The position numbers were made by a program, and so were the translations under genes. Shown here piece by piece: positions 3,579-21,770 of a stretch of 64,000 bases of DNA. The stretch lies in the NCBI RefSeq assembly GCF_000150275.1, contig NW_002060957.1:62001-126000 (forward strand). The letters run 5' to 3'. The notes beneath the pieces were generated by a model. The model had not been told where the DNA came from. It was given only the letters and a program-made list of their open reading frames with translations, and ran no database searches. Every line of letters starts with the position of its first letter. The first letter of the stretch is position 1. The stretch is from Trichoplax adhaerens. Its lineage: Eukaryota; Animalia; Placozoa.

Positions 3579-4265
3579 TTATATCCACCTTTGCATTTCC
3601 TGGTAAAATTCAAATGCTGAAGTGACTGATTCCTCCGCTGAGGATATTTTGTTAGTCATTGGTTGAAAATCGAACGGAGAAACTTCAGAAAAATAATCAT
3701 TTGGTAAACAATCATCAATATGAGTAATTGGTTCAGTGCTCTTGCGGATATATTTTGTCTTGGTAGCTGGAACAGTTTTCAGCACAAGTGCGGAATCTTC
3801 GCCTTCCAGAGGTAGCAAAGAGTGATATCGTTGCTGATTTCTGCCAGTGTTTAAGGCATGGCTTGCTTTACTGTTGACACTTGCTTTGATTTCATCAGTT
3901 AAAATAACGTCCGGTATATCAGAATTCTCTAATTGTTTTAACGTATTCCTAATCACTTTCGTCGAATTCAATCGAGGTTGACTGAGTAGAACTTGCCGAT
4001 GTTGCAATAAATTTCCATTAGTTTCTCCATTATCACTACTCTTTTCTTTGCGTTGGGCAGGAATTTTTGTCGGGATACGGCTACCATTCTTTTCAGTTTT
4101 AAGGCTATCATTAGCAAAATTGACATGTTTCTTATTTTCATTGTCATGGCGTGTTACCTGGACACGAATTGGAGTATCTTGACGGTTTACATCTTTAAAT
4201 TGTTGAATAGGTGCTGGTGGGGATCTAATTTGCGGTCGTTTATTAAGGTAATCGCCTGTTGCCAT
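3579..4265 (-). CDS. PPP1R35: PPP1R35-like centriolar PP1-interacting protein, single coding exon (ATG 4265; alternative in-frame ATG 4280)
   Basis: RVxF-type motif KHVNF, then QPRLNST, ALNTGRNQQRYHSLLPLE and C-terminal AFEFYQEMQRWI. These resemble, from memory, the PPP1R35 C-terminal blocks LNVPRSKRLFRDLVSL and FDLFLKLRQW. Confidence 0.7.
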   Translation of the reverse strand: MATGDYLNKRPQIRSPPAPIQQFKDVNRQDTPIRVQVTRHDNENKKHVNFANDSLKTEKNGSRIPTKIPAQRKEKSSDNGETNGNLLQHRQVLLSQPRLNSTKVIRNTLKQLENSDIPDVILTDEIKASVNSKASHALNTGRNQQRYHSLLPLEGEDSALVLKTVPATKTKYIRKSTEPITHIDDCLPNDYFSEVSPFDFQPMTNKISSAEESVTSAFEFYQEMQRWI

Positions 4266-5212
4266 TGCAGAGGTCTTCATTAAAAATAATTCAATGAATG
4301 GAGAAACGGGTTGCAGTAAGAAAAAACTACTACTAGAAGGAATGATTAATGAGTACAACGAGATGCGATGGCAATTAGCAGACCAGGATAATGATAACGT
4401 TGAGCTGGAGAGTCTGTCTTGAGGAATGAAATGACCATCAAGCCACGGACATGATTGGAAACATTTAACGATACTTGTCTCTTGTAAGAATATCGAATTC
4501 AGAGAAGATAGAAGAGATTCAAGGTGACTAGGAGCCAATTTGTGCACTATGCCGTAAACGGAATATCAGGCTTTCTCCAGCTCATTAATCTTTGGAATCT
4601 TGAAGGTTACGTTTTCTAGACCCTTGGCCTCCAAGTTTGATTTATCATCGCTTTCTTTCGTTTAAAATTTCCCGCGTAGTAGTAGACTGTACTGAAAGGT
4701 ATCAAAAGCTGGATTGGAAAGCTAGATACCAAGCAAATGGAAGAATCTCACACTATTACTGGCTTTCTACTTAGTCTCTTTCAATAGAATGCGACCAGCA
4801 CCTTTCGCAAAATCACTTAAAGCCAAGCAAATCGGCTGACAAAGATTTTCATAGACTGGCAAAGTAAAACTGTCGAGATAGGCAGAGGTTAAGTAAACTT
4901 AATTCAAAATCAATTTCAGTCTACTGTCGAATGTAGTCGAGAGTGTTGCATACTGAGCTCTACAACTACCGTAGAGTACGACAACCCTGTATGGCATCAA
5001 CACTGGGGGATAGCCAAGTTGCCAGGATCGCGCAGGTACCTCCGGCAGCTTTAAATCTCAGTTTTCCTTGCAAGTCAAAACGATACAAATTGCTGTATCC
5101 AAATGACTTGTTGCGGTACTGTGGCACATCCACTATCCATCATACAAGTTTCTACACGAATCGCATCCATCGACTATCCAATTTCATAATAATCCGCCCA
5201 GTAGGCAGTTTA

Positions 5213-5698
5213 CTAATCGTATCCATCTACTAATCCAATTTGATAATAATACATGCAGTAAGCTTTGCCTTTGGTAAGCCTATGTTAGTGTTGATCTTCA
5301 TCTACCTACATTAATCGTATTCATCTACGATCCAATTTGATAATAATACATGCAGTAAGCTTTGCCTTTGGTAAGCCTATGTTGGAGTTGATCTTCATCT
5401 ACCTACACTAATCGTATCCATCTACTATCCAATTTGATAATAATACATGCAGTAAGCTTTGCCTTTGGTAAGCCTATGTCGGTGTTGATCTTCATTTACC
5501 TACACTAATCGTATCCATCTACTATCCAATTTGATAATCATACATGGAGTAAGCTTTGCCTTTGGTAAGCCTATGTTGGTGTTGATCTTCATTTACCTAC
5601 ACTAATCGTATCAATCTACTAATCCAATTTGATAATAATACATGGAGTAGGCCTTTGCCTATGGTATACATGAGTTGGTGTTGATCTTCATCTACCTA
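5213..5698. repeat. Tandem repeat, 97-98 bp unit x5, plus a degenerate partial copy at ~5157-5212
   Basis: taatcgtatccatctac...gtaagctttgcctttggtaagcctatg...gatcttcatctacctac starts at 5214, 5312, 5409, 5506 and 5603. Confidence 0.95.
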
Positions 5699-5919: not shown

Positions 5920-6740
5920 TGCTAGTCGATCCTCGAATCTTGGAAGATAGATATCGTTTAATTCGAATCTAATCTGTAAAGATAGATATACTTCTAATCT
6001 AGCCAGTAAAGATAGATATTCTTCTAATCTAGCCAGTAAAGATAGATATATTACTAATCTAGTCAGTAAAGATAGATGTACTTGAATTCTAATCGAATCC
6101 GTAAACATACGCATGCCTAAATTCGAATAAGTCAAGATACGATTCGAAATGCTTGATTTCTAATCTACCAAGTCATTATAGACATGTTTGAATCCTAATC
6201 GAGTAAGTGTAGATAGATGTATTATTCTCATCTAGTCAGCGAAGATAGATACTCGTTTACGTTAACCCTAATCTAATCGATGAAGACAAATACGCTTCGT
6301 TCTAATTTAATAAGTAAAGATACTCGTAGATAGACGCGAAGATGCTTTAATCCTAATCTAGTAAGTAAACGTACAAATAAGTAGGTTGTGATTCTAATCT
6401 AATCAGTGAAAGATCGACATGCTTCAATTATTCCTAATCGAGTTGGTGTTCCTTTTCTCATTTTACGTCTATGATTCTGATGTAGTCTGTAGTAAAAGAT
6501 AGATTTTAATCTCAATCTAATAGGTGGCGATAGATACGCTTTTACTTTAACCTACAGTAATAATAAAGTGAAGATATAGTAGGCTTGTTTTAATTTTAAT
6601 TTAGTAAGTAAAGATAAATATCAATGCTCTTTAATTCTAGCCTAGTAAGTGAAGATATACGTATACATATACTTATTATAATCCAGGAAATGCAGATAGA
6701 ATATACTTTACTCCAGATCTAGTCAGTGTGTAAGATATAC
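5920..6740. repeat. Minisatellite of ~30 bp (ttctaatctagccagtaaagatagatata), near-perfect at 5990-6080 and degenerate outwards
   Basis: Near-identical copies at ~5992, 6022 and 6052; ctaatctag...gtaaagata variants recur to ~6740. Confidence 0.85.
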
Positions 6741-6849: not shown

Positions 6850-8079
6850 ATGATATCCGCTGGACATTTTGATATTGCCATTATTGGTCCTGGTTGCTTT
6901 GGTTCAGCATGTGCATACCACTTAACAAAATTATGCAACAAGAAAGTTTGCCTCATCGGCCCTAATGAACCCCAAGGTCCTCGCAGTGATAGTAAAAATT
7001 CCGTGTTTGCATCACATTACGATACCGGCAGAATAACTTGCTGCTCTGGAACCAACCCAGTCTCACCTCGTTTAAATCAGAGATCAATCAATCGATACCG
7101 TGAAATAGAATCAGAAAGTGGTATCTCATTTTTTAATCCTGTAGGATTTATTGCAATCGGTACAAAGGATAGCGAATTTATTCGAGTTACGGAAAAATGC
7201 CTTGATCAATTTAAAATTGAAGCTGAAATATTAGACAGTAATCAACTAACGGATAAATTTCCTTATTTAACCATACCAAGTAATTACGTAGGTATCTATC
7301 AACCAGAAAAAGCTGGTTATATTGATATTCGTCGCTGCGTGCAAGCTCAAATTAAAGTAGCCCAACTACAAGGTTGCATTCGTATCGCAGAAATTGTTGA
7401 ATCAATTGTGGAAAACAAAGATGGTAAATTAAAAATTTCTACAGAAACTGGTCGCTACATTACTGCTGATAAAATTGTTCTAGCAACCGGTGCCTTTACT
7501 AAGTGTAAGGATCTAATGGCAAGCTGGAATCGAAAATTAGATTTAGATGTAAGAAGAGAAACAACGGTCAAACTGCAAGTTAATGCCAAAGGCTTACAAG
7601 ACCTAAGTACAATGCCATCCTTAATTTATGCCGATGCCACTGAACCACGCCATGTGTGCTATATTTTGCCACCTATTAAATACAATGATGACGGTGTTTA
7701 TTATCTCAAGATAGGCCACGGGTTACATTATAGTAAAAAAATCGATCCTGAAAATCTTGTTCAATGGTATCATGGCTCGGGTGATCCTGACGCTGAGACT
7801 TCTCTGAAACAGATATTAAAAAAATTGATACCTCACGACTACTTTACAGCTTCCAAGTGTGATAGTTGTGCTATTGCTCGTACACCTCATCGTTCTCCTA
7901 TGATTGATAAAGTTGGCAACAATGTTACTATCTTAGTTGGAGGTAATGGTGGATCTGCAAAATCATGCAACGAAATTGGCTACATAGGTGCATTGAATGT
8001 TTTACACCGCAAATGGCATTACGATATACCGGCGTCAGTATTTCAGGTTTGTTATGAAGAAAACGAATCAAAGCTTTAA
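6850..8079 (+). CDS. FAD-dependent oxidoreductase, DAO/monomeric sarcosine oxidase-like family, paralog 1; intronless; C-terminal PTS1 SKL
   Basis: 409 aa ORF with Rossmann motif IIGPGCFGS, HYDTGRIT, VLATGAF, YLKIGH, DSCAIART and GGNGGSAKS; ends ESKL. Confidence 0.9.
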   Translation: MISAGHFDIAIIGPGCFGSACAYHLTKLCNKKVCLIGPNEPQGPRSDSKNSVFASHYDTGRITCCSGTNPVSPRLNQRSINRYREIESESGISFFNPVGFIAIGTKDSEFIRVTEKCLDQFKIEAEILDSNQLTDKFPYLTIPSNYVGIYQPEKAGYIDIRRCVQAQIKVAQLQGCIRIAEIVESIVENKDGKLKISTETGRYITADKIVLATGAFTKCKDLMASWNRKLDLDVRRETTVKLQVNAKGLQDLSTMPSLIYADATEPRHVCYILPPIKYNDDGVYYLKIGHGLHYSKKIDPENLVQWYHGSGDPDAETSLKQILKKLIPHDYFTASKCDSCAIARTPHRSPMIDKVGNNVTILVGGNGGSAKSCNEIGYIGALNVLHRKWHYDIPASVFQVCYEENESKL

Positions 8080-8788
8080 GGTGGTAGTCCCTATAGCTTA
8101 CTGTAAAAATATCAACAACGCAACGATATTTTCATTATTCTGTTATTAAGTAACGCTGATTAAGCTATGATTAAAAAAAGGAATCCTTCCAATATTTCGA
8201 GGATATCCAACTTGCTCTACACATCCAGAACGCCAACAGTCAATACGATATTGGATGAAATTGCTATATCAAATGTGTTGTCTACTAACTCATTTATACA
8301 GTATTATGCGCAAAAATATTAACTTATAGCACTTATTGATCAACCATAAGGTATCAGTGCAAGAAAAATAGCCACTACGCTATTTTGGTATTATTTATTA
8401 CTGGCATAAAAATCTTGATCATAAACCGACACGGTCGTGTTACACATTAAGAGCGCCAAATATTACCATGTGATTTTATAGTCTGTTAACAATTTAAGTT
8501 ACCCTATGTTAAAATTAGCACTTGATGAAGATATCTTATCAGAAAATTTAATTAAATACTTTATCAATAAACTCATCCATCTTTTGATATGCCACGTTCT
8601 ATGAATTTAAACAACCTGTGCAAAATACTGGTTCTTTATTTTAGTGAATATATAATATTTCAATAAGGATAATACCTAAGTGATTACATTTGATTATGTT
8701 GTCGCTTCGTTATCATCTTTAATGCCAACTGTTGATAGAGAACAATACTTTGTACTGTCCTTTTAAGATGTAAAATAATGTGATGCAA

Positions 8789-10012
8789 TTAATTCTGCTT
8801 AAAATAAACGGAAAATTCACTCTTTGGAATATCGTAAGACCAATCATTACTTAATGCTGTTAAAGCACCCAAATGCCCAATTTCGTCTGCTGATTTAGCC
8901 GCATGAGAACAACCGCCAGTTAACACAGTAACTCCTTCGTTAACTTCACCAATCATGACATGATTGCTAGGAGTGTGAGTGGAAACGCAATGGTCAGTAA
9001 CTACAGAGCCATATTCAAATGTTGGCATTAATCGATTTATTGTTTTTACCAAGACCTCCACAAGATTGTCAGATTCAACATTGCGATACCACTCAATAAC
9101 TTGCTGATGATCATCTAGTTTATCAGAACCAGTCAAGCCATGACCAATCTTAATATAAAATTTTCCATCATCATAACGAATTGGTGGTAGGATATAGCAA
9201 TCGTAACGAGCATCTTTGCCAGTGAAATAGATGACAGCTGGCATTGACTTCATATCTCGCAAATCCTTATCTTTAACTTGTAGTTTAACTACTGTTTCTT
9301 TCATCAATTCAATATCCAATTGCTTTGGGGGATCTGGTAACAACTTTTTAAAGGGCGTAAAAGCACCTGTAGCAAGAATCACTTTACCACTATATAAATA
9401 ATTTCCCTTTTCAGTGACAATTTTAAATTGGCCACGATCATCTCGATCGACCCTATCAACAATTTCTTTAATTAATGTACATCCTTGTTTTTGAGCTATC
9501 GTCATTTGTGCAATAACATGTTGACGAATATTAATGTAGCCACCTTGACTTGGTTGATAAATACCAACGCATGAGGGAGGAAAAGAAAAATAAGGAAATT
9601 TCGATTTGAGCTGCTGATGATCAAGCAATTCAAATTCGACTTGCAAAAGTTTGGCACATTCCTTTACTTTATCAATATAGCTAGTTCCTTCTTCAACGAC
9701 ACCTAAATATCCAGATGGAGTATAAAATTGCATATTTGATTTTTCTTCTACTTCTACATAGCGTGGTATGGAACGTTGAGCTAACTTGGCCCATACAAGA
9801 TCAGGATCTAGAATTCGTGTAATTCTGCCAGCATCGTAATGAGCTCCATACACACTGCGCTCAGTATCTTGTGATCTTGGATGATCGGGTTCATCCGGTC
9901 CTATCAAGCAAATTTTCTTCTCACAAAGTTGACTTAAATGTCGTGCACAAGCAGATCCAATGCAACCAGCACCTATGATAGTAATATCGAAAGAGCCCAA
10001 ATCTGTCCCCAT
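8789..10012 (-). CDS. FAD-dependent sarcosine-oxidase-like oxidoreductase, paralog 2; intronless; no PTS1
   Basis: 407 aa ORF with IIGAGCIGS, HYDAGRITR, ILATGAF, YIKIGH, DHCVSTHT and GGCSHAAKS; ends FKQN. Confidence 0.9.
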   Translation of the reverse strand: MGTDLGSFDITIIGAGCIGSACARHLSQLCEKKICLIGPDEPDHPRSQDTERSVYGAHYDAGRITRILDPDLVWAKLAQRSIPRYVEVEEKSNMQFYTPSGYLGVVEEGTSYIDKVKECAKLLQVEFELLDHQQLKSKFPYFSFPPSCVGIYQPSQGGYINIRQHVIAQMTIAQKQGCTLIKEIVDRVDRDDRGQFKIVTEKGNYLYSGKVILATGAFTPFKKLLPDPPKQLDIELMKETVVKLQVKDKDLRDMKSMPAVIYFTGKDARYDCYILPPIRYDDGKFYIKIGHGLTGSDKLDDHQQVIEWYRNVESDNLVEVLVKTINRLMPTFEYGSVVTDHCVSTHTPSNHVMIGEVNEGVTVLTGGCSHAAKSADEIGHLGALTALSNDWSYDIPKSEFSVYFKQN

Positions 10013-11040
10013 ATTGATTTTAGAAGCGATTCTACAGAGTCTATATTAATGTGTGTATCGTATAGTACTACAAATAACGGTTACAATAATCGTTGCAGCA
10101 CCATAAAATTGAAAACTTTAGATAAGATTATACGTTACAACACAGCACAGTAGTATCAATTTTTGATCCGATTATTTGTTTACAGCACTGCAAAAGTACC
10201 GATTTAATATCCGATTTTGTAGATTGCACTATTATACGGGCACAATAGCAATAAAAATACTGTAATATTCACAATTATTGTTGCAACAGTGTTCTTAAAA
10301 TTAAACAGCTAAATCTTAATAACACGTAGTCACCCGACGATCATTCGATTGCAAGTATTCGAGCTTCGCAAGATTGAAATTTGATGAATCTTCAGTCAGC
10401 AGCTACTATCCAGTACTGTAGGTTAATTATTAGCTCAAGTACTGATACTTAGCACTATTCCATTCAATTTACTTGCTAATATCAAATTATTCTAGAAACG
10501 ATGAGCATCCAGATGATAATTAATTAATCGATTCCAGAGATTAAAAGTAATCTATACGAGTACAACTAGATAACGTGATGGACTATATGCTGCAGTATGC
10601 TCGCGTATGCACGATAGAGATTGCTATATACAGTATATTGCCACTCAGTACTATACCGTAATATCAATTTGTATGAGTACTGTAAGTTTACTTAATTTAT
10701 GCAGTAAACAAATCAATTCATCGCGATAAACTAACGGATTTAAGAGTACTAGAACAGCAAGTAAAAGTAATAGAACGAAAGCCATGGAACGAGTAAGGGC
10801 TATTCTAGCTTTATAAAATAACTCATGTGCTTAAGTTATGTTCCTATAAGATTGGTTGGAAATGCTTGCACAGATTAAGCTGATTTAATGTGAATAAGAT
10901 ACGAGAATTAGCATTTCGTAACAGTCTAGATAGTACAAGAGATTTATTAAGATATTTCTTGTATCCAATCCAAATTATCATAAAATTGTTATGTGTATGA
11001 TTGATTGAATAGAAGTACTAGTATAGTGCATAGACGGAAG

Positions 11041-12270
11041 ATGGAAAAAAATGAAGAGAATAGCTATGATGTTGCAGTGATTGGAGCTGGGTGCATGGGA
11101 TCTGCTTGTGCACGCCATTTAGCCGAATGTTACAAGGGAATGAAAGTTTGCCTTATTGGCCCTGATGAGCCCACTTTACCTCGTAGTCAAAGCGGTCGCA
11201 GCGTTTTCGCTGCTTATTATGACCAAGGAAGAATTACACGACGTTTAGATACTGATCCTGTTTGGTCAAGAATAGCAGATCGCTCCATTTCACGTTATCC
11301 ATATCTGCAAGAATCAACCGGTATTCAATATTATAGTGAAGTTGGATCGATCATCATTGGACCCAAACAGGATATCATTTGGGGAAAAATCGAAAAGTGT
11401 GCTAAAGACTTGCAAATTAATTACAATCGATTAAATAATAAGGACTTAAAGTCTAGATTCCCTTATCTTCATCTCGCCGATGATTATATCGGATTTTATG
11501 AAGCCAATTCTGCAGGTTATATTTCTCCTCGAGGTCAAGTCAAGGCAGAAATAAAAGCTGCTATGGATAATGGATGCCAATTAATCAGAGATATTGTTTA
11601 TCAAGTTCAACGAAGTCAAGATGGAAAATTTATTATTACAACGGAATCCAATCGGGTTATAAGCAGCCAAAAGATTGTAGTCGCAACAGGTGCTTTTACA
11701 TTATTTAAAGACATCATACCAACCGATATTCGTAAAAAGTTGGCTATTACATGTGGTACTCAAACTGTAGTAAAATTACAAGTAAGCGAAGAAGAGTTAA
11801 AAGATTATACTGGTATGCCATGTATTCTACACCGCAACTCTAGTCAACAGAATGGAGATTGGTACTTGTTGCCACCAATTCTTTATCCTAATGGCAAATA
11901 TTACATTAAAATTGGTCATAGCAAAGATTTTATTCGCGAAATAAACACTTATGAGCATGTATTAGAATGGTTTCATGGCACTGGTGATATTGAAGCAAAA
12001 AACACTTTAGTCGACATCATAAATCACTTTCTGCCCCACTTTAAGCCAGTTTCTATAGAATCAGATTGTTGTGCTTATACTCTTACCCCTCATAATCATG
12101 TTATGATTGGTAACATCGCAGAAGGTATGGTGTTACTAACTGGTGGTAATGGTCATGCAGCTAAATCAGCAGATGAACTTGGCAGAATTGGTGCTTTAAC
12201 AATCATGAATGAATCGTGGAATTATGATATTTCCAGTGAAGAGTTTAAATTATGCTTGAACTCATCATGA
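11041..12270 (+). CDS. FAD-dependent sarcosine-oxidase-like oxidoreductase, paralog 3; intronless; no PTS1
   Basis: First ATG at 11041 (the ORF track starts at a TTG). Motifs VIGAGCMGS, YYDQGRITR, DCCAYTLT and GGNGHAAKS; ends LNSS. Confidence 0.9.
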   Translation: MEKNEENSYDVAVIGAGCMGSACARHLAECYKGMKVCLIGPDEPTLPRSQSGRSVFAAYYDQGRITRRLDTDPVWSRIADRSISRYPYLQESTGIQYYSEVGSIIIGPKQDIIWGKIEKCAKDLQINYNRLNNKDLKSRFPYLHLADDYIGFYEANSAGYISPRGQVKAEIKAAMDNGCQLIRDIVYQVQRSQDGKFIITTESNRVISSQKIVVATGAFTLFKDIIPTDIRKKLAITCGTQTVVKLQVSEEELKDYTGMPCILHRNSSQQNGDWYLLPPILYPNGKYYIKIGHSKDFIREINTYEHVLEWFHGTGDIEAKNTLVDIINHFLPHFKPVSIESDCCAYTLTPHNHVMIGNIAEGMVLLTGGNGHAAKSADELGRIGALTIMNESWNYDISSEEFKLCLNSS

Positions 12271-12830
12271 TGTGTTGCATATAAGTATTTTCTCTTAATT
12301 TGTCATCTTCTTGTAGGATTATAATAGATAATCGATAAAGATTATTGAACCTTGGATTTGCTCACTTTACCAACTTTAGCTATCGTTAAATTGATTGCCT
12401 AATTTAACCTTAAGTTATCATCAATGACTCTTGGAATTACGACATTTCTAGCGAGGAGTAGTAATTATACTTGAAAGCATGATGTGTTGTGTATTACTTT
12501 TTTAATAGGTCATCTTTTTATAGGGTTATAATATGGTAATTGATAAATATAGATTAAATTACTCTAATTTATCAACCATAATTATCATTAAATTGACTAC
12601 CTAATTTAACCTTAAGTAATCATGAATAAATCTTGGATTTCGAAATTTACGGTAAACAATTTAAATTATACTTGAAACTATCATACTGTGTAGTGTTGTA
12701 TATGATTATTCTTTAAATCTCTTTGCAGGATTGTAATATGATAATTATATAATTGATAACTAAATAATGCTTTAATTATTTTTATCAACTTTAGCTATCG
12801 TTAGATTGACTAAATACTTTAGCCTCCAGT
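12200..12830. repeat. ~210 bp tandem repeat x3 made from the last ~70 coding bases plus 3' flank of paralog 3; further copies at ~17845-18270
   Basis: The gene end atcatgaatgaatcgtggaattatgatatttccagtgaagagtttaaattatgcttgaa recurs in degenerate form at ~12417, 12619, 17932 and 18135. Confidence 0.8.
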
Positions 12831-13799
12831 TAATAAAGTACAGCGATGCATTAATAATTGATCAATGCTATTTAAATTAGTTATCTTAATTTAACCTACG
12901 GTAATGAGCTTAGTACCCTTTTACTAAAGCACAAATACGCGTTGTATTTCGCGGACTATGATATTCGTGCGTAAGTCATCAGTTCGTCTCTAAATTTGTC
13001 AATTTAATGTTCCTATTTTCTCATGATCCATTTAAGTAGCCAAAAATAATGGATACGCGGTAATTTACAAGATGCCGTTGTAGTGATGTGCCCCATATTT
13101 GATTATAAGGATAGCTATATTTGATTGTGTTAATTGCTATATTTGATGCAGTTAGGTTACTAAGAATAGATATTATCGTAAAGCTAATATTAGACGATTG
13201 ATAACTACTGTATTCGAAATTTCTGATGACTAATATTAGCCAGTTGACTATTCATATGACTAGAACACTGTCATTGTGAAGATGCCCAACACCGAAAGGT
13301 GCTGGACATTGATAGAAGAGCAGTGATATCTTAAGTAGAATGCTTCAGTTTGGAGAAGATAATGATGTTCTATTTCAAGAAAAGTATTCTATTTGATGAC
13401 TCATGTCTGATTGTAGATTAATTAAGTTGTCATAAATGGGTTTAGTGAAATTATTTCAGAACTGCAGAGATAAACTCACGGAGAGAGAAGAGACTTTACT
13501 TCACTTTCGGCTCGGAATACTTTAGATTTTAGATTAGATTCTTGTAGTAATCAATTATTGCTCTACTATTTCTAAAACGTTGTACTAAAAGCTTTTAGAA
13601 AATACCATTGACTAAGACAAGTTATTGTGAGACACATTTATTACAGCTGTACGGATGATTTTGGCTCATATGAAGGATGTTTGGGCAAGAATGATAGTCT
13701 CTGATAATAATTGTAATCCATCGAATCTGCAACTAGGTGTATGGAATAAATTAAAATTAGGAGCGTCAAAGCTATCGGCTAATGTTATTGGATTAAGAC

Positions 13800-14645
13800 T
13801 TTAATACGACTTTAATTAACAGACAAAATTCCGGAGAATATGATATCGCCGTGGCTGATTCATCTACAGTTTAAAAGCAGCTGTAGGTAATGAAAATATG
13901 AGCTGAACCTGATCTACAAATTCTATACAGCGCTTTCGTATTGGAAGGCTGATAAAGAGTCCAAGCAGTTCGTTTTTAAGCCGTAGCGACTCTTAAGGCA
14001 CAAATGCCGAAGAAAATGATATCGTCATAATGAATCGATGAATAATCTACAGTTTAAAAGCAGCTTTAGGTAGTAAATTATGACCTGAAGCTGATCAACC
14101 AATTACAGGATTAATTATAGGAGCCTTAACTAACATATTACTACAGCATTGGAAGTCTGGTAAGAGTTTGGGCAGTTCTTAAGCCATAACGACTTTAACA
14201 TCCAATTATCGGAGAAAATGATGTCATCATAACTGATCGATGATTAATCTACTAATTAAGAGCAATCCTAAAGTAGTAAAATAGGAGCTGAACCTGATCA
14301 ATCAATTATGAGAGTCTTCACTACAACTTCTGCATTGGAAGGCTGAAATGCAGGAGAAAATAATCTTGTCATAACTGATCGATGATTAATCTACAGTTTT
14401 TTAAGAGCAGCTCTAGGCAATAAAATACGAACTGAACCTGATTCAACCAATTTATATAATTATAGGAGTTTCAACTACAATTTTTTACATTGGAAGGTCA
14501 CTAAGGGTTCAGGTAATTAGTTTTTAAGCCATATCGAATATAACACACAAATGCCAAAGAAAATAATATCGTTATAACTGATCGATGACTAATCTACAGT
14601 TTAAGAGCCGCTCTAGGTAGTAAAATACGAGTTGAACCTGATTCG
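13800..14645. repeat. Degenerate ~180 bp tandem repeat x~5; homologous array x~4 at ~18270-18965
   Basis: Recurrent ggagaaaatgatatcgtcataactgatcgatgattaatctacagtttaagagcagctctaggtagtaaaatatgagctgaacctgatc. Confidence 0.9.
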
Positions 14646-15546
14646 ATCTGAGTATCTAGCTGCAGTAGTAGCTAATCCTGTACTCTACCCCTGCAATGCA
14701 AAGCTAATCATAATGCTACCGTGTTTATTCAAAAATCGCTAGGCATTTTACAAAATCATTAAATAAAATAACTCATTCTTAATTGACATCTTTCAGTTGG
14801 TTTATTCCTGCATAGTAATTTATTCATTTGGAGCTACGTATTGAATATTTCACATTCAGTTCAATACTTTTCATGATTTGCATAGTGCTTTAATTAATTT
14901 GCATAGTGCTTTCATTAAAACATAGAGTGCACTCTATTATCCCTTATTTGCAATACATTGCATAGGGACCAAGCATTCGTTTCTTCCATACGTTTTATTA
15001 TATTATGCAGTAAACACCCATAAATGATTAGTATAATACCGTACGGATTTCATCATTTTAGCTGTTCTAGAAATAGACAGCTATTACTGTTCTATCGCTA
15101 GACTTGGTAGCATTAGGCTTGCTGAAACATTGCTTCGACTTCTTCTTCAAGTGGTTGCTACAAGACGGTGTCGATAGCTAGGCATAGCTAACATCGTTGA
15201 GCTACGCCAAGTATTACAGTATTCAGTGACAGTAAACTGTTGTCGAAGTGGCGTTGGGCTTGGTGAGAAACTTCTTCAAGCGGTTACAACTAACGTTGGG
15301 ACAATTGCCTATCGGAGACAACAACTTGAACAACACAGCGAACATTGTAGAAGTACAGCAAGCATTTCTTACTCAGTTACACTAGACTGTTGTCCTAGTA
15401 GCGCTTAGCTTGTTCAGCTATTTCTCCTTCAATTGTTGCTACAAGTGTGGTAGAAACGGTGATTATTAGTCTCCATTTTACCATCTATTGACAGTGTCTG
15501 ACAGCAAGCATTAATTTAAAATTAAACCCTGGACCACTTAATCAAA

Positions 15547-16788
15547 ATGGGAGATCGTCACAACACACTTGGTCACTACGATATCACTGTCATTGGTGCT
15601 GGATCCATGGGATCTGCTTGTGCACGCCATTTAACCCAAATTTACAAGGGTAAAATATGCCTTGTCGGCCCTGATGAGCCAACAGTACCACGCCATCAGA
15701 GTGGTCGAAGTGTTTTCGCTGCATATTATGATCAAGGTAGAATTACTAGACATCTCGATGCAGATCCGGTATGGTGCCAATTAGCTAATCGATCGATACC
15801 ACGTTATCGACAATTGGAGAAAGCTACTGGTGTCCAATACTATCATGAACGTGGATTTCTTGTCCTTGGATCCAAAGATGATCCTAAAATTGCTCAAATC
15901 AACAAAGTAGCAGAAATGATTGGGTTTAACTACGAGCAATTAAGTTATACTGAGTTAAAACGACGATTCCCTTACTTACAAGTTCCTCATGACTTTATTG
16001 GATTATATGAGTCCACTGATGCTGGTTATATCTCTCCTCGTGGCCAAGTAGAAGCGGAAATAAAAGCAGCTACCGATAATGGCTGTACTCTCGTTCGAGA
16101 GATTGTCAATAAGGTCAGTAGAAATAACGACGGCGATTATATAATCATCACCGAAACCAATAAAGTTATCACCAGTCGTAAAATCGTAGTAGCAACGGGA
16201 GCCTTTACCTTATTTAAAGAAATTATACCGGATGACATTCGCCAACGGTTAGACATTCAATGTGGCACACAAACTGTAGTTAAATTACAAGTCAATGCTG
16301 CTGACAGACAACGTTATAGCAACATGCCATGTATGGTATATCTATGCCCAGAAGATCCGATGGAATACTGGTATTCATTGCCTCCAGTTCTTTATCCAGA
16401 CGGTCAATATTATCTAAAAATCGGTCATGGCGGTGATTTAATTAAAATAATGCCTACTCATAAGGACGTACTTAAGTGGTTTCATGGCCACGGTGATCCT
16501 AAAACTACAGATATATTAACTAAAGCAATGCTCAGTGTTCTACCTGGATTTAAGCCAGTATCCATAAAACCTGATGGTTGTGCTTATACAATCACACCAC
16601 ATAGCCATGTCATGATTGATAAAATTACTGAAAATATGGTGTTATTAAGTGGTGGCAATGGATATGCTGCAAAATCTTCTGATGAAATAGGTCGAGTTGG
16701 AGCACTGACGATTACCCATGACAACTGGCATTATGACATACCACAGGAAGCTTTCAAGTTATGCTTTAAACTGACTCCAAAACTGTAA
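15547..16788 (+). CDS. FAD-dependent sarcosine-oxidase-like oxidoreductase, paralog 4; intronless; C-terminal PKL (PTS1 variant)
   Basis: 413 aa ORF with VIGAGSMGS, YYDQGRITR, YLKIGH, DGCAYTIT and GGNGYAAKS; ends TPKL. Confidence 0.9.
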   Translation: MGDRHNTLGHYDITVIGAGSMGSACARHLTQIYKGKICLVGPDEPTVPRHQSGRSVFAAYYDQGRITRHLDADPVWCQLANRSIPRYRQLEKATGVQYYHERGFLVLGSKDDPKIAQINKVAEMIGFNYEQLSYTELKRRFPYLQVPHDFIGLYESTDAGYISPRGQVEAEIKAATDNGCTLVREIVNKVSRNNDGDYIIITETNKVITSRKIVVATGAFTLFKEIIPDDIRQRLDIQCGTQTVVKLQVNAADRQRYSNMPCMVYLCPEDPMEYWYSLPPVLYPDGQYYLKIGHGGDLIKIMPTHKDVLKWFHGHGDPKTTDILTKAMLSVLPGFKPVSIKPDGCAYTITPHSHVMIDKITENMVLLSGGNGYAAKSSDEIGRVGALTITHDNWHYDIPQEAFKLCFKLTPKL

Positions 16789-19700
16789 CCTATTCATAGC
16801 GTTCTAACTTGTGCTCAATCTGGATTGCCTTATTTTCCTTCATATTCAAGTATACTGTACAGCATGAGCTTAGTTCTACTTCATTTGAGTAATACTATAC
16901 TATAGACAAAAGTTAATTTTATAATGGATGGAAGACATATACTGTACATTCTTGATGTATTAGGATAGCTAATCATAAGGCCTTAGCACTCAATAGATTA
17001 TTCGCAATTGTGTTTGAAAATGTATCCATTTTTCAATGCCTCTGTATGCATTTCTTGCAGATTCTTCAATGTTTTACTACGATGTAAAACTGTTGTTTAA
17101 AGCTACGAAAATGTATTCAATAGCCTTCACAAGTAAACGCCTTACGCTTGTATATTAGGTTAGCTCATTAATTAAGCGACCGTAGTCAATGTTGTCTTAA
17201 ATGCTCTCAATTCAGTAACATTTTTGTAAGTCAATAGGGAATGTATGTAACTAAAAAATACACGTACAATCCAAGTCCTGAATCCACTATTAACAGCTAC
17301 AATCATGGATAGATTGATAATAACAACGCCAACTCATTCATTAAACATTGGCTACAGTTAGCCATGTACGAGATATCTCGTATAATATTATAGCATCTTT
17401 ATGCCTTTTTCTAGTAACGGTGTGAACTTGCTTTTCTATCCAAATTTTGAACCTCTGGTTTATTAAATTATGAATTAGATCGTACAAAAACAAATCTAAT
17501 AAGATTCTCTTAGCTATGTCGGTGCTCTTTTATCGTAGTTGGCAACACGAAATCTGTAATTCTACCAATGTGCCATGCAGTAGATTTAGTCAAGAATTTC
17601 TTACTACAAAATAATAATTCGAATTGTTTGAAGTTCATGAAATTTCACAATCTACGAACTATTTATTTAAGAATCAATAACTAACTGAAATAAGAGGCAG
17701 GAAATTACAACCTTTGTAATGATCAATACTCAGTTTTTAGTTGATAGACCATTTTTGTCTGTAACATATATTCTTAATTGAACACCAGAGCAGAAACAAG
17801 GAAACGGTTAGCTTCATGGAGATTGGAGGATAAATGTAACAAATAATCGATAAAGGTTATTGAACCTTGGATTTGCTCACTTTATCAACTTTAGCTATCG
17901 TTAGATTGATCATCTAATTTAATATTAAGTTATCATCAATGAATCTTGAAATTACGGCATTTCCAGCGATGAATTTAAATTATACTTGAAGGCATGATGT
18001 GCTGTGTATTACTTTTTTAATATAGCATGTTTTTTACAGGATTACAATAGGGTAACTGATCAATGTTGATTAAATTACTTTAATGTATCAACTAGAACCA
18101 TTGTTAAATTGACTACCTAAATTAACCTTAAGTTATGAATAAATCTTGAATTTCAATATTTCCAGTGACGAATTTAAAATTACACTTGAATTTATCAAAC
18201 AGTCTTCTGTTGTGTATATATTTATTTTCAATCTCTTTACACGATTATATGATAATTATACGTATAAAATTGATCAGTAAATAATGATGATTAATTTACA
18301 GTTTCAGAGCAGCTTTAAGTAATAAAACATGAGCTACTATAGACCGGATCAATGAATTACAGTATACAGTATATTATAATTATGAAAGTCTTAACTATAA
18401 TACCACAGTAGTTTCATTATTGAAATTTGGAAGGCTGACAAGGGTTCGGGTAGTTCATTTTTAACTCATAGAGACTTTATCAGACAAAATGCCGGAGAAA
18501 ATGATATCGTCACAACTGATCGATGATTAATCTACAGTTTAATAGCAGCTCTAGGTAGTAGAATATGAGTTGAACCTGATCAACTAATTACTGTATAAGA
18601 GTCTTAACTAAAATACTACTTCTGCATTGGAAGGCTGGTAAGGGTCCGGGTAGTTTTTTTAGACTATAACGACTTTAACACACAAATTTCCAAATATCGT
18701 CATAATTGATCGATAATTAATCCACAGTTTAAGAGCAGTTCTAGACAGTAAAATATGAATTAAACCTGATCAATCAATTATAATTATAGGAGCCTTAACC
18801 ACAATTTCTGTATTGGAAAGTTGATAGAGATCCGGGTACTTTTTAAGCCATAACAACTCGAATACATAGATATCGGAGAAAATGATGTCATTCTAATTGA
18901 TCGATGATTAATCTACAGTTTAAGAGCAGCTTTAGGTAGTAAAATAAGAGCTAAACCCAATTAAATCATAATAATCTAGCTGCAATTGTAGCTGATCCTG
19001 TCCACTACTTCTACACTGCAAGGCTAATAGGGGTCCGTCTGACCTACTATCGTAGTCCAAATAGAGCAAAGTAATTCATTATCAAATGACATCTTTCAGC
19101 TGGTTTATTCCTAAATAGTAATTAATTTATTCATTGGAGCTACGTATTGAATCACTATTTTACATTTAATTCCTTACCTTTCATGGTTTGCATAGTGCTT
19201 TCATGAAAGCATCGAGTGCAGTATTGTCTTTTAATATTTGCAATTAGCTTATGATACTTATGCGGTAAGCACTCGTCAATGGCATAATATAATACCGTAC
19301 AGATGATATCATTTTAGCCTTTATTGCCGCCACAGTTGGTAGCATCTTTTTAGGCTTGCTGAAATATTGCTTCTACTTCTTCTTCAAGTGATTGCTATAA
19401 GTAGCAAAGCGACAGTGACTGCAGACGGTATCGACAACAAGACAAAGCTAACATTATAGAGCTACGCCAAGTATTACAGTATTCAGTAACAGTAAACTGT
19501 TGTCGAAGTGGCGTTGGGCTTGGTGAGAAACTTCTTCAAGCGGTTACAACTAACGTTGGGACAATTGCCTATCAGACAACAACCTGAACAACACAGCGAA
19601 CATTGTAGAAGTACAGCAAGCATTTCTTACTCAGCTGCACTAGACTGTTGTCCTAGTAGCGCTTAGCTTGTTTAGCTATTTCTCCTTCAATTGTTGCTAC

Positions 19701-19805
19701 AAACGTGGTAGGAACGGTGATTACTAGCCTCCTTTTTACCATCTATTGACAGTGTCTGACAGCAAGCATTAATTTAAAATTAAACCCTGGACTCACTTAA
19801 TCAAA

Positions 19806-21047
19806 ATGGGAGATCGTCACAACACACTTGGTCACTACGATATCACTGTCATTGGTGCTGGATCCATGGGATCTGCTTGTGCACGCCATTTAACCCAAAT
19901 TTACAAGGGTAAAATATGCCTTGTCGGCCCTGATGAGCCAACAGTACCACGCCATCAGAGTGGTCGAAGTGTTTTCGCTGCATATTATGATCAAGGTAGA
20001 ATTACTAGACATCTCGATGCAGATCCGGTATGGTGCCAATTAGCTAATCGATCGATACCACGTTATCGACAATTGGAGAAAGCTACTGGTGTCCAATACT
20101 ATCATGAACGTGGATTTCTTGTCCTTGGATCCAAAGATGATCCTAAAATTGCTCAAATCAACAAAGTAGCAGAAATGATTGGGTTTAACTACGAACAATT
20201 AAGTTATACTGAGTTAAAACGACGATTTCCTTACTTACAAGTTCCTCATGACTTTATTGGATTATATGAGTCCACTGATGCTGGTTATATCTCTCCTCGT
20301 GGCCAAGTAGAAGCGGAAATCAAAGCAGCTACTGATAATGGCTGTACTCTCGTTCGAGAGATTGTCAATAAGGTCAGTAGAAATAACAACGGCGATTATA
20401 CAATCATCACCGAAACCAATAAAGTTATCACCAGTCGTAAAATCGTAGTAGCAACGGGAGCCTTTACCTTATTTAAAGAAATTATACCGGATGACATTCG
20501 CCAACGGTTAGACATTCAATGTGGCACACAAACTGTAGTTAAATTACAAGTCAATGCTGCTGACAGACAACGTTATAGCAACATGCCATGTATGGTGTAT
20601 CTATACCCAGAAGATCCGATGGAATTCTGGTATTCATTGCCTCCAGTTCTTTATCCAGACGGTCAATATTATCTAAAAATCGGTCATGGCGGTGATTTAA
20701 TTAAAATAATGCCTACTCATAAGGACGTACTTAAGTGGTTTCATGGCCACGGTGATCCTAAAACTACAGATATATTAACTAAAGCAATGCTCAGTGTTCT
20801 ACCCGGATTTAAGCCAGTATCCATAAAACCTGATGGTTGTGCTTATACAATTACACCACATAGCCATGTCATGATTGATAAAATAACTGAAAATATGGTG
20901 TTATTAAGTGGTGGCAATGGATGTGCTGCAAAATCTTCTGATGAAATAGGTCGAGTTGGAGCACTGACGATTACCCATGACAACTGGCATTATGATATAC
21001 CACAGGAAGCTTTCAAGTTATGCTTTAAACTGACACCAAAACTGTAA
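19806..21047 (+). CDS. FAD-dependent sarcosine-oxidase-like oxidoreductase, paralog 5; near-identical to paralog 4
   Basis: 413 aa ORF with five amino-acid differences from 15547..16788; ends TPKL. Confidence 0.9.
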   Translation: MGDRHNTLGHYDITVIGAGSMGSACARHLTQIYKGKICLVGPDEPTVPRHQSGRSVFAAYYDQGRITRHLDADPVWCQLANRSIPRYRQLEKATGVQYYHERGFLVLGSKDDPKIAQINKVAEMIGFNYEQLSYTELKRRFPYLQVPHDFIGLYESTDAGYISPRGQVEAEIKAATDNGCTLVREIVNKVSRNNNGDYTIITETNKVITSRKIVVATGAFTLFKEIIPDDIRQRLDIQCGTQTVVKLQVNAADRQRYSNMPCMVYLYPEDPMEFWYSLPPVLYPDGQYYLKIGHGGDLIKIMPTHKDVLKWFHGHGDPKTTDILTKAMLSVLPGFKPVSIKPDGCAYTITPHSHVMIDKITENMVLLSGGNGCAAKSSDEIGRVGALTITHDNWHYDIPQEAFKLCFKLTPKL

Positions 21048-21770
21048 CCTGTTAATAGCGTTCTAACTTGTGCTCAATCTGGATTGCCTTATTTTCCTTC
21101 ATATTCAAGTATACTGTACAGCATGAGCTTAGTCCTACTTCATATGAGTAAAACAATACCATAGACTAACTTAAATAATTTTATATTGCATGGAAGATAT
21201 GTCTATTCCATTCCATATGCAATAAGATAGCTAATCATAAGGTCTTGTCATCCAAGAGATCATTCGCAATCATGTTTGAAAACTTATCAATTTTTTAATC
21301 CCTACGTATGCATTTCTTGTAGGTTCTTCAAGGTTCTACTACAATGTAAAACTGTTATTTTAAGCTATAAAAATATATTCAAAAGCCGCTTTTCAATGTG
21401 TAACATCTGAAATAGACCAAGATAATGTATATCGAGAACATTTGCTATGTCGTTGATGATCACAAGCAACCGCCTTACACTTGCATATTAGGTTAGTTCA
21501 TTAGACGACCATTGTCAATGCTGTCATAAATGCACTCAATTCAGCAGCTTTTTGGTAAGCAAATAATGATTGTATACAACTAAAAATACACATACACGTA
21601 TAATCTAAGTCCTGAATCCACAGTTACAGCTATAATCATGACTATATTAATAATAACAACGGCAACCCAGTCATTAAAAATTGGCTACAGTTAGGCATGT
21701 ACGAGATCTCTCGTATGGTATCATAATATGTTCGTATTTATGCATTTTTTCTAATAACGGTGTGAGCTTA

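What the first reader, a model, noticed from the sequence alone, without database searches (positions are those of the whole stretch)
6850..21047. Five-gene array of intronless sarcosine-oxidase-fold flavoenzymes: candidate uncharacterised amine-oxidation system, possibly of bacterial origin
Seen: five 407-413 aa single-exon CDSs in 14 kb, whereas LONP1, NARS1, POLG and the Apaf-1-like gene are heavily intron-split. All five share LIGPxEP...(H/Y)YDxGRIT, Y(I/L/S)LPP, KIGH, a conserved Cys in DxCxxxxTP and GGxxxxAKS. Established: in monomeric sarcosine oxidase the equivalent Cys (CMYT, C315) binds FAD covalently and K265 (LKLG) activates O2. Inference: these are covalent-flavin, H2O2-producing amine oxidases or N-demethylases. 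The GPDEP/HYDxGRITR signature is not the HxxGSSHGxSR of animal PIPOX, and I recall it mainly from uncharacterised marine proteobacterial proteins. Old horizontal acquisition followed by local expansion is therefore plausible, for example to handle N-methylated compounds from algal or biofilm food.
Basis: partly seen in the sequence, partly recalled or inferred. Interest (0 to 1): 0.8.

Follow-up and report, generated by a model that had tools for sequence, protein, structure and literature searches.

The report
Intronless amine-oxidase gene array in Trichoplax
Five neighbouring intron-free genes in a placozoan genome encode sarcosine-oxidase-like flavoenzymes. They belong to a little-studied, probably peroxisomal enzyme family shared with many invertebrates, so they are not a recent bacterial import into this animal.

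Summary
There are five intact single-exon ORFs of 407-413 aa (one on the minus strand) in 14 kb, and all are Pfam DAO. The closest solved relatives are monomeric sarcosine oxidase (MSOX) and N-methyl-L-tryptophan oxidase (MTOX). The flavin-linking Cys, the O2-activating Lys and the carboxylate-binding Arg and Lys all align. They score far below the NCBIfam cut-offs for MTOX and for MSOX/PIPOX, so they form a separate subfamily.

The genome is Trichoplax: three copies are 99% identical to Trichoplax sp. H2 proteins, in the same gene order.

- The family occurs in amphioxus, hemichordates, echinoderms, bivalves, a chiton, an annelid and spiders.
- All six bilaterian genes I examined have introns. 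Four positions are identical in column and phase across the six species (five phyla).
- Half of the animal proteins end in a peroxisomal SKL-type signal, against none of 125 bacterial relatives.
- Bacterial relatives form their own clade. The placozoan copies are not nested in it, and a single animal clade is not rejected (p-AU 0.39).

Two points stay open. I cannot say whether the placozoan founder lost all introns (a retrocopy) or never had them. I also cannot say whether the family reached stem animals from bacteria. The substrate is unknown.

The parts
6850..8079 (+). Copy 1 (409 aa). It ends in -SKL, a canonical PTS1. The carboxylate-binding Arg (MSOX R52 / MTOX R51) is replaced by Cys.
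   Evidence: ORF; DAO E 7.9e-29; 99% identical to Trichoplax sp. H2 P0008; residue mapping; C-terminus
8789..10012 (-). Copy 2 (407 aa), head-to-head with copy 3. It ends in -KQN, with no PTS1.
   Evidence: ORF; DAO E 4.6e-31; 99.5% identical to H2 P0006. The same head-to-head pair of intronless orthologs (72% and 74% identity) lies on contig L028 from another sample.
11041..12270 (+). Copy 3 (409 aa from the ATG at 11041; the open frame reaches back to a TTG at 11005). It ends in -NSS, with no PTS1.
   Evidence: ORF; DAO E 6.1e-30; residues 13-421 of the TTG ORF are 99.3% identical to the whole of H2 P0005
15547..16788 (+). Copy 4 (413 aa). It ends in -PKL, a PTS1-like tripeptide. It was used as the query and for the structure model.
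   Evidence: ORF; DAO E 7.2e-30; MSOX E 4.4e-15 over residues 10-392; AF2 pLDDT 94.9; Foldseek best matches MSOX and MTOX, TM 0.77-0.85
19806..21047 (+). Copy 5 (413 aa, ends in -PKL), a recent duplicate of copy 4.
   Evidence: 15 nucleotide differences in 1242 (10 synonymous, 5 non-synonymous: D195N, I199T, C267Y, Y274F, Y373C)
15163..17125 (+). First unit of the recent tandem duplication (about 4.26 kb spacing). It pairs with 19423-21387.
   Evidence: blastn 95.3% over 1968 nt; direct repeats D4, D6, D7, D10 at 4258-4262 nt spacing
19423..21387 (+). Second unit of the recent tandem duplication.

Best explanation
The region is a tandem array of five intact, intron-free paralogs in Trichoplax. 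They belong to a family of MSOX/MTOX-like flavin amine oxidases found in placozoans and many bilaterians.

Inferred mechanism: each enzyme carries FAD bound covalently to the conserved Cys of DxCxxxxTP. It binds the carboxylate of an N-alkylated or cyclic amino acid with the conserved Arg and Lys. It oxidises the C-N bond and passes the electrons to O2 at the conserved KIGH Lys, which produces H2O2. Copies 1, 4 and 5 carry SKL or PKL C-termini, like most animal relatives, and are probably imported into peroxisomes. Copies 2 and 3 lack the signal and probably act in the cytosol.

The array grew by local duplication within placozoans, most recently by a 4.26-kb tandem duplication. The genes descend from the same ancestral animal gene as the bilaterian ones and are not a separate bacterial import. 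The lack of introns is a placozoan peculiarity. Either the founder was a processed retrocopy that lost all four or more old introns, or the introns arose later in the bilaterian stem.

Shown here: the ORFs, the fold, the residue conservation, the phyletic spread, the introns and the C-termini. Inferred: covalent flavinylation, oxidase activity, substrate class, localisation and the route to intronlessness.
For: - ORFs and family.
- MSOX, MTOX and NikD are the nearest solved relatives by sequence and by fold.
- In MTOX numbering, R48, K259, C308 and K341 are conserved in all copies and in nearly all 63 aligned family members.
- The genome is Trichoplax, with synteny to H2.
- A profile search ranks about 80 animal proteins from seven further phyla or classes above the bacterial ones.
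- Each animal phylum forms one group in the tree, and the placozoan copies form one clade with 100 support.
- A single animal clade is not rejected (delta lnL 1.63, p-AU 0.389).
- Placozoan copies share with bilaterians a 2-residue insertion after the LLP motif, extra residues after GPxEP, and the Cys of (V/I)CL(I/V)GP. The insertion is absent from all 28 bacterial-clade rows and from MTOX. The extra residues after GPxEP vary among animals, and the Cys occurs in one bacterial row (P0095).
- A strict PTS1 occurs in 41 of 82 animal-clade proteins and in 0 of 125 bacterial-clade proteins.
- Four intron positions are identical in column and phase in Branchiostoma, Mytilus, Saccoglossus, Strongylocentrotus, Argiope and Owenia.
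- The tandem duplication is documented.
Against: - The best mixture-model tree (a short search only) places placozoans as sister to the bacterial clade (SH-aLRT 83), with an unresolved backbone. FastTree places them next to the MTOX outgroup. Animal monophyly is therefore allowed, not demonstrated.
- All Trichoplax copies lack introns, as a transferred bacterial gene would.
- PTS1 is only three residues and could arise by convergence. Two of the five copies lack it, and PKL is not a canonical signal.
- The shared indels are short and lie in variable loops.
- No cnidarian, sponge or ctenophore member was seen, so vertical descent needs losses.
- Nothing here tests activity, flavin linkage, expression or localisation.
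Confidence: 0.7

Rival explanations
1. One reading: placozoans acquired the gene from a bacterium independently of the bilaterian family, and the copies then expanded locally.
For: All five copies are intronless in an intron-rich neighbourhood. The short-search IQ-TREE C20 tree puts Placozoa sister to the bacterial clade, SH-aLRT 83. Identity to the best bacterial proteins (35-38%) is about the same as to bivalve proteins (36-40%).
Against: - Placozoans are sister to the whole sampled bacterial clade (99-100 support) and are not nested inside it.
- Holding the animals together is not rejected (p-AU 0.389).
- Placozoan copies share indels and the CL(I/V)GP Cys with bilaterians against bacteria and the outgroup.
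- SKL or PKL termini occur as in bilaterians and in 0 of 125 bacterial proteins.
- This reading needs a second, separate origin for the intron-bearing bilaterian family.
- GC content is host-like, and the array is conserved with 72-74% identical orthologs in a more distant placozoan-like sample.
Confidence: 0.12
2. Ultimate origin by ancient transfer: a bacterium passed the gene to the animal stem lineage before placozoans and bilaterians split. It entered without introns, stayed so in placozoans, and gained four or more introns and a PTS1 early in animals. This agrees with the best explanation on what the genes are. It differs only on why they lack introns.
For: Among the best 120 hits of two searches I saw only animals and bacteria, and no fungi, plants, protists, cnidarians or sponges. 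The bacterial sister family is large and spread over Chloroflexota, Rhizobiaceae, Rhodobacteraceae, Gammaproteobacteria, Tectomicrobia and a cyanobacterium. The wider MSOX/MTOX group is mostly bacterial (established knowledge).
Against: Animals are not nested inside the sampled bacterial diversity. The two clades are reciprocal, so the direction is open. Absence from other eukaryotes rests on ranked top-120 lists, not on an exhaustive search. An equally simple alternative is an old eukaryotic gene with many losses plus a retrocopy in placozoans.
Confidence: 0.35
3. The copies are decaying or functionless duplicates, or bacterial contamination mis-assembled into the scaffold.
For: Copy 1 has the longest branch and has lost the carboxylate-binding Arg. 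Its H2 counterpart has a disturbed N-terminal frame.
Against: All five frames are intact over 407-413 codons, with the catalytic residues conserved. Copies 4 and 5 differ by 10 synonymous and 5 non-synonymous changes, and their coding sequence is more similar (98.8%) than the whole duplicated block (95.3%). The array lies between intron-split animal genes, has host-like GC, and recurs in a second assembly (H2) and on a haplotype contig.
Confidence: 0.03

Closest known systems
Monomeric sarcosine oxidase (MSOX, Bacillus; PDB 1EL5, 1L9C, 1ZOV)
   Same: Same two-domain fold (Foldseek E 1e-30, TM 0.77-0.84). Full-length sequence match at E 4e-15. The flavin-linking Cys315, Lys265, Arg49, Arg52 and Lys348 all have aligned counterparts, and Tyr317 does in copies 3-5.
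   Different: Only about 22% identity. TIGR01377 scores 83-115 bits against a cut-off of 479.65. His45 is Tyr here, and His269 is Gly or Ser with a His one position earlier. These are animal genes with peroxisomal-type C-termini. The substrate is unknown.
N-methyl-L-tryptophan oxidase (MTOX/SolA, E. coli; PDB 2UZZ)
   Same: Best-scoring NCBIfam model (NF008425, 110-140 bits). Fold match with TM 0.77/0.85. C308, K259, R48 and K341 are conserved. Database annotators call the Trichoplax H2 orthologs 'N-methyl-L-tryptophan oxidase'.
   Different: The scores are about half the equivalog cut-off of 257, so these are not MTOX orthologs. MTOX sits on a very long branch outside the whole family (branch length 1.6-2.7).
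Peroxisomal sarcosine / L-pipecolate oxidase (PIPOX) of animals
   Same: An animal, PTS1-bearing, MSOX-like covalent flavoenzyme that produces H2O2 in peroxisomes (established knowledge). Some amphioxus members of this family are auto-annotated 'PIPOX'.
   Different: The family model that, to my knowledge, covers MSOX and PIPOX (TIGR01377) is missed by a wide margin. The motif after the Rossmann fold is (H/Y)YDxGRIT rather than the PIPOX/MSOX type. I had no PIPOX sequence to hand, so I made no direct tree. A separate intron-split MSOX-like candidate exists elsewhere in this genome.
Uncharacterised bacterial 'FAD-dependent oxidoreductase / sarcosine oxidase' family (Entotheonella, Chloroflexota, Rhizobiaceae, Rhodobacteraceae)
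   Same: 35-38% identity over the full length. Same motifs (GPDEP, HYDEGR, LPP, KIG, C..TP, AKS) and same catalytic residues.
   Different: Forms its own clade (99-100 support). Lacks the animal indels and any PTS1. Gene neighbourhoods differ between lineages and give no common substrate clue.

Membership tests
Pfam DAO (PF01266), FAD-dependent oxidoreductase | Full-length match above the gathering score of 27.9 bits | tested here: met
   102-109 bits, E 1e-29 to 1e-31, profile positions 1-349 of 353 in all five copies
MSOX/MTOX/NikD structural group | Two-domain MSOX fold, with these enzymes as nearest structural neighbours | tested here: met
   AF2 model of copy 4, pLDDT 94.9, pTM 0.93. The top 31 Foldseek PDB hits are MSOX, MTOX, T. 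roseum sarcosine oxidase and NikD, E 1e-27 to 1e-30. DMGDH and the amadoriases follow at E 1e-21.
MSOX/MTOX/NikD structural group | Cys at the 8-alpha-S-cysteinyl-FAD position (MSOX C315 / MTOX C308) | tested here: met
   Aligned Cys in all five copies and in 59 of the 60 family rows aligned besides MTOX. Covalent attachment itself cannot be tested with these tools.
MSOX/MTOX/NikD structural group | Lys at the O2-activation site (MSOX K265 / MTOX K259), and Arg and Lys that bind the substrate carboxylate (MSOX R52 and K348) | tested here: met
   The K259 and K341 equivalents are conserved in all five copies. The R51 equivalent is conserved in copies 2-5 but is Cys in copy 1.
NCBIfam NF008425, N-methyl-L-tryptophan oxidase (equivalog) | Score at or above the curated cut-off of 257 bits | tested here: not met
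   110-140 bits
NCBIfam TIGR01377, soxA_mon (monomeric sarcosine oxidase / PIPOX subfamily) | Score at or above the curated cut-off of 479.65 bits | tested here: not met
   83-115 bits
Peroxisomal matrix proteins (PTS1 class) | C-terminal tripeptide (S/A/C)-(K/R/H)-(L/M) | tested here: inconclusive
   Copy 1 ends -SKL (met). Copies 4 and 5 end -PKL (non-canonical). Copies 2 and 3 end -KQN and -NSS (not met). 41 of 82 animal relatives meet it, against 0 of 125 bacterial relatives. Import was not tested.
Horizontally acquired bacterial gene in an animal | Nested within bacterial sequences in a tree, to the exclusion of other animals | tested here: not met
   The bacterial clade excludes the placozoans (99-100 support). 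Animal monophyly is not rejected, p-AU 0.389.
Horizontally acquired bacterial gene in an animal | No orthologs, or only sporadic ones, in related animals | tested here: not met
   Orthologs occur in seven further animal phyla or classes, with conserved introns

The most novel reading that the evidence does not exclude
The array descends from one processed retrocopy of an ancient animal gene for a peroxisomal amine oxidase, so it lost all four or more ancestral introns at once. It then diversified in placozoans into enzymes with different compartments (peroxisome or cytosol) and different substrate pockets. Copy 1 even lost the carboxylate-binding Arg. The family as a whole would be an uncharacterised animal oxidase class. 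It was not seen among the best hits from vertebrates, insects or nematodes, and may itself stem from a bacterial gift to stem animals.
Probability: 0.3. Interest if true: 0.5.

Novelty: new member of a known kind. Interest (0 to 1): 0.3.

Why it matters
The result removes an apparent case of bacterial gene transfer into an early-branching animal. It replaces that reading with a clearer picture: an MSOX/MTOX-like, probably peroxisomal oxidase family that many marine invertebrates and spiders keep. I found no paper on it in Trichoplax or other invertebrates, and no vertebrate, insect or nematode member among the best hits.

The contrast between four deeply conserved bilaterian introns and none in any placozoan copy makes a neat test case for retrocopy origin against late intron gain. 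The paralogs differ in targeting signal and in pocket residues, so they form a natural panel for working out what these enzymes oxidise. Candidates include N-methyl amino acids or cyclic imino acids from food.

The biochemistry itself is of a well-known kind, so the wider impact is modest.

Tried and rejected
- The 'careful' IQ-TREE run (C20 PMSF, 1000 bootstraps, 63 rows) did not finish in two 300-s slots. I used the short-search tree plus an AU test instead, so the backbone support values are SH-aLRT only.
- Searching with E. coli SolA to collect MSOX and PIPOX outgroups returned only enterobacterial MTOX. The trees are therefore rooted on MTOX alone, a long branch.
- I looked for a common gene neighbourhood in bacteria as a substrate clue. 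The Entotheonella homolog follows gcvT-gcvH-lplA. None of 80 other bacterial loci has these genes nearby, and the ten neighbours I scanned are unrelated to each other. The Rhizobium copy sits beside the cell-wall (dcw) cluster. I dropped this line.
- I looked for a canonical PIPOX in this genome. One weak candidate is a DAO+GcvT gene, so it is of the SARDH/DMGDH type (L029). Another (L030) is a weak intron-split match to the ends of the MTOX and soxA_mon models. I searched its exons one by one by reference and did not join them, so it stays unresolved.
- Cluster look-up of unnamed relatives added only one name, the bivalve Tegillarca. The organism behind the 71-74% identical placozoan-like contigs is not named.
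- Literature searches found nothing on this family in Trichoplax or other invertebrates.
- I did not run the large representative-protein search or the complex prediction, because no claim here needed them.

Full report
**1. What is in the sequence**

The window holds five intact ORFs:
- 6850-8079 (+, 409 aa)
- 8789-10012 (-, 407 aa)
- 11005-12270 (+)
- 15547-16788 (+, 413 aa)
- 19806-21047 (+, 413 aa)

The third ORF is 421 aa from a TTG. Its ATG at 11041 gives 409 aa and coincides with the start of the Trichoplax sp. H2 ortholog. All five are full-length Pfam DAO proteins (E 1e-29 to 1e-31). No ORF of 70 aa or more lies in the two long spacers, 12271-15546 and 16789-19805.

The flanks are intron-split animal genes. 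AAA-ATPase pieces lie at 179-2572, and Apaf-1-like CARD, WHD and helical-domain exons lie at 23629-28023. GC content is uniform and host-like. The one omission is that copy 2 lies on the minus strand, head-to-head with copy 3.

**2. Whose genome**

Copies 1, 2 and 3 are 98.9%, 99.5% and 99.3% identical to three Trichoplax sp. H2 proteins. Those three proteins lie in the same order behind the same AAA-ATPase gene, on a contig that ends before copies 4 and 5. The assembly has 105.6 Mb in 1414 contigs. The window therefore comes from a Trichoplax genome.

The whole genome contains only these five copies. Three more sit on a 10-kb contig, C1247, which looks like the alternative haplotype.

**3. 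What the proteins are**

By sequence, the nearest solved structures are monomeric sarcosine oxidase (E 4e-15 over residues 10-392), MTOX and NikD. An AlphaFold model of copy 4 is confident (pLDDT 94.9, pTM 0.93). Its best structural matches are again MSOX, MTOX, Thermomicrobium sarcosine oxidase and NikD (TM 0.74-0.85). DMGDH and the amadoriases come well behind.

The HMMER alignment places the Cys of DGCAYTITP on MSOX C315. It places the Lys of LKIGH on K265, and the two Arg of GRITR on R49 and R52. It places the Lys of AAKS on K348.

In a 63-row family alignment, the equivalents of MTOX R48, K259, C308 and K341 are present in all copies and in almost every relative. The R51 position (MSOX R52, a carboxylate binder) is Cys in copy 1 only. 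The MSOX Y317 position reads I, S, Y, Y, Y in copies 1-5.

The proteins miss the curated cut-offs for MTOX (110-140 bits against 257) and for the MSOX/PIPOX subfamily (83-115 bits against 480). They work like MSOX and MTOX but are not members of those orthologous groups.

From these residues I infer the following:
- a covalently flavinylated oxidase;
- a substrate that is an N-substituted or cyclic amino acid bearing a carboxylate;
- release of H2O2.

None of this was tested biochemically.

**4. Relatives and the transfer question**

A first search gave placozoan, amphioxus and bivalve proteins, then many bacterial ones at similar identity of 35-40%. This is the pattern that suggested transfer.

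A profile built from animal sequences changed the picture. About 80 animal proteins rank above the first bacteria (Entotheonella). They come from:
- Branchiostoma (several species);
- hemichordates (Glandiceps, Ptychodera, Saccoglossus);
- echinoderms (sea urchins, starfish, a brittle star, a sea cucumber);
- many bivalves and a chiton;
- the annelid Owenia;
- spiders.

I saw no vertebrate, insect, nematode, cnidarian, sponge or non-animal eukaryote in the top 120. This is a limited negative, because only ranked lists are shown.

**5. Introns**

All six bilaterian genes I fetched span 4.4-16.7 kb for about 410 codons. I mapped their exons exactly, with GT/AG junctions that reproduce the database protein.

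Four introns fall in the same alignment column and phase in all six species: Branchiostoma, Mytilus, Saccoglossus, Strongylocentrotus, Argiope and Owenia. In copy 4 numbering they are after residue 46 (phase 0), 94 (phase 1), 285 (phase 1) and 333 (phase 1). The first one is shifted by two columns in the sea urchin. A fifth intron (residue 257, phase 2) is shared by the three protostomes.

The bilaterian ancestor therefore already had a gene with at least four introns. None of the Trichoplax copies has any.

A genomic contig from another, more distant placozoan-like sample carries the orthologs of copies 2 and 3 (72% and 74% identity). They are in the same head-to-head arrangement and are also intron-free. 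Both the array and its intronless state are therefore old within placozoans.

**6. Trees**

In a 216-row FastTree, the bacterial relatives form one clade (support 99) and the bilaterians another (97). Hemichordata, Echinodermata, Cephalochordata and Arachnida are each monophyletic. The placozoan sequences form one clade.

A 63-row IQ-TREE analysis (LG+C20 PMSF, short search) gives Bacteria 100 and Placozoa 100, with an unresolved backbone. Placozoa comes out as sister to Bacteria at SH-aLRT 83, and the MTOX root falls among the bilaterians. The two methods disagree on where the placozoans attach.

An AU test shows that forcing all animals into one clade costs only 1.63 log-likelihood units (p = 0.389). 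The trees therefore do not nest Trichoplax inside the bacteria, and they do not reject a single animal clade. They do not prove one either.

**7. Characters outside the tree**

Placozoan and bilaterian proteins share a two-residue insertion after the LLP motif and one or two extra residues after GPxEP. The insertion is absent from all 28 bacterial-clade rows and from MTOX. The extra residues after GPxEP vary among animals: amphioxus and one unnamed animal row have the short form. Placozoans and bilaterians also share the Cys of (V/I)CL(I/V)GP, which occurs in only one bacterial row. The only indels that unite placozoans with bacteria are also shared with the outgroup, so they are ancestral states.

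A strict peroxisomal signal, [SAC][KRH][LM] at the C-terminus, is present in 41 of 82 animal-clade proteins and in 0 of 125 bacterial-clade proteins. Within the animals it occurs in all five amphioxus proteins, 10 of 13 hemichordate proteins, 18 of 32 bivalve proteins and both Owenia proteins.

Copy 1 ends in SKL, and copies 4 and 5 in PKL, as does the chiton protein. Copies 2 and 3 have no such ending.

These characters favour common descent of the placozoan and bilaterian genes. They also point to a peroxisomal location for part of the array.

**8. How the array grew**

All placozoan sequences form one clade. The duplications therefore happened after the split from bilaterians and from a single founder.

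The youngest event is a tandem duplication with about 4.26 kb spacing. Block 15163-17125 matches 19423-21387 at 95.3%, while the two coding sequences are 98.8% identical (10 synonymous and 5 non-synonymous differences). This fits purifying selection, gene conversion, or both.

**9. Substrate clues from bacteria**

The Entotheonella homolog lies directly behind gcvT, gcvH and lplA, which would suit a glycine-yielding demethylation. However, none of 80 further bacterial loci has these genes nearby. The other neighbourhoods are unrelated to one another. I draw no conclusion on substrate.

**10. Verdict**

The assignment to covalent-flavin, MSOX/MTOX-like amine oxidases is well supported by sequence and fold.

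The idea of a bacterial acquisition in this lineage is not supported. The family is widespread in animals, it has anciently conserved introns in bilaterians, and it carries a shared peroxisomal signal.

Two points remain open. The first is why the placozoan genes have no introns: a retrocopy founder, or introns gained only in the bilaterian stem. The second is whether the animal family as a whole came from bacteria before placozoans and bilaterians diverged.

No paper in the library deals with this family in Trichoplax or invertebrates. Databases already label the H2 orthologs as MTOX or MSOX by similarity.

I rate this a new member of a known kind, of modest interest.

No contig here was taken for human. 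I submitted no spliced model as a joined sequence. The exons of the candidate MSOX-like gene at G000:C1414 were searched one by one by reference.

Noticed in passing
window 179-2572 (+): The upstream intron-split gene carries two AAA plus AAA_lid_3 modules. In Trichoplax sp. H2 it is a 784-aa protein with the same domains. It therefore looks like an NVL/SPATA5/PEX-type double-ring AAA ATPase and not a Lon protease.
   Followed up: partly
window 5212-5698: A tandem array of 5.0 copies of a 97-nt unit (92% matches) lies just upstream of copy 1. A 30-nt repeat with 4 copies lies at 5962-6083.
   Followed up: no
window 12313-12833, 13955-14658, 17837-18136, 18440-18977: The spacers between copies 3, 4 and 5 share several short repeat families (62-87% identity). 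One is a 191-nt tandem repeat at 18493-18957. These are possibly remnants of older duplication units or of a small mobile element.
   Followed up: no
G000:C1247:981-10336 (L002, L005, L007): A 10-kb contig carries near-identical versions of copies 4, 3 and 2 in the same relative order. The gap between copies 3 and 4 is about 4.6 kb, against 3.3 kb in the window. This is probably the other haplotype with an indel. The contig starts too close to copy 4 to show whether it also has the 4/5 duplication.
   Followed up: partly
L019:4800-6400 (Trichoplax sp. H2 contig NOWV01000291.1): In H2 the ortholog of copy 1 has a disturbed N-terminal reading frame. The open frame begins upstream of GPNEPQG without the GxGxxG motif, and the database model is 379 aa with a short 'intron'. 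This is either an assembly error or a lesion in that strain.
   Followed up: partly
G000:C1414:6551505-6554200 (L030) and G000:C1412:1031259-1032584 (L029): These are two further intron-split DAO-family genes. L029 has DAO plus GcvT-type pieces, so it is of the SARDH/DMGDH type. L030 has weak exon matches to the N- and C-terminal ends of the MTOX and soxA_mon models and may be the canonical PIPOX-like gene.
   Followed up: partly
L032:5577-9194 (Candidatus Entotheonella factor): In this sponge-symbiont genome the family member is the fourth gene of a tight same-strand run, gcvT-gcvH-lplA-oxidase. The arrangement was not seen in 80 other bacterial loci.
   Followed up: yes
L018:18476-20000 (Mytilus trossulus) and one search hits: Bilaterians also expand this family locally. 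A second DAO gene lies 4.5 kb downstream of the Mytilus gene. Seven Glandiceps paralogs map to one 24.8-Mb record.
   Followed up: no
window 3579-4547 (-): A 322-aa single ORF with a weak match to PPP1R35_C (E 2e-4, below the cut-off). The H2 annotation has a 233-aa gene without a domain at the matching place.
   Followed up: no
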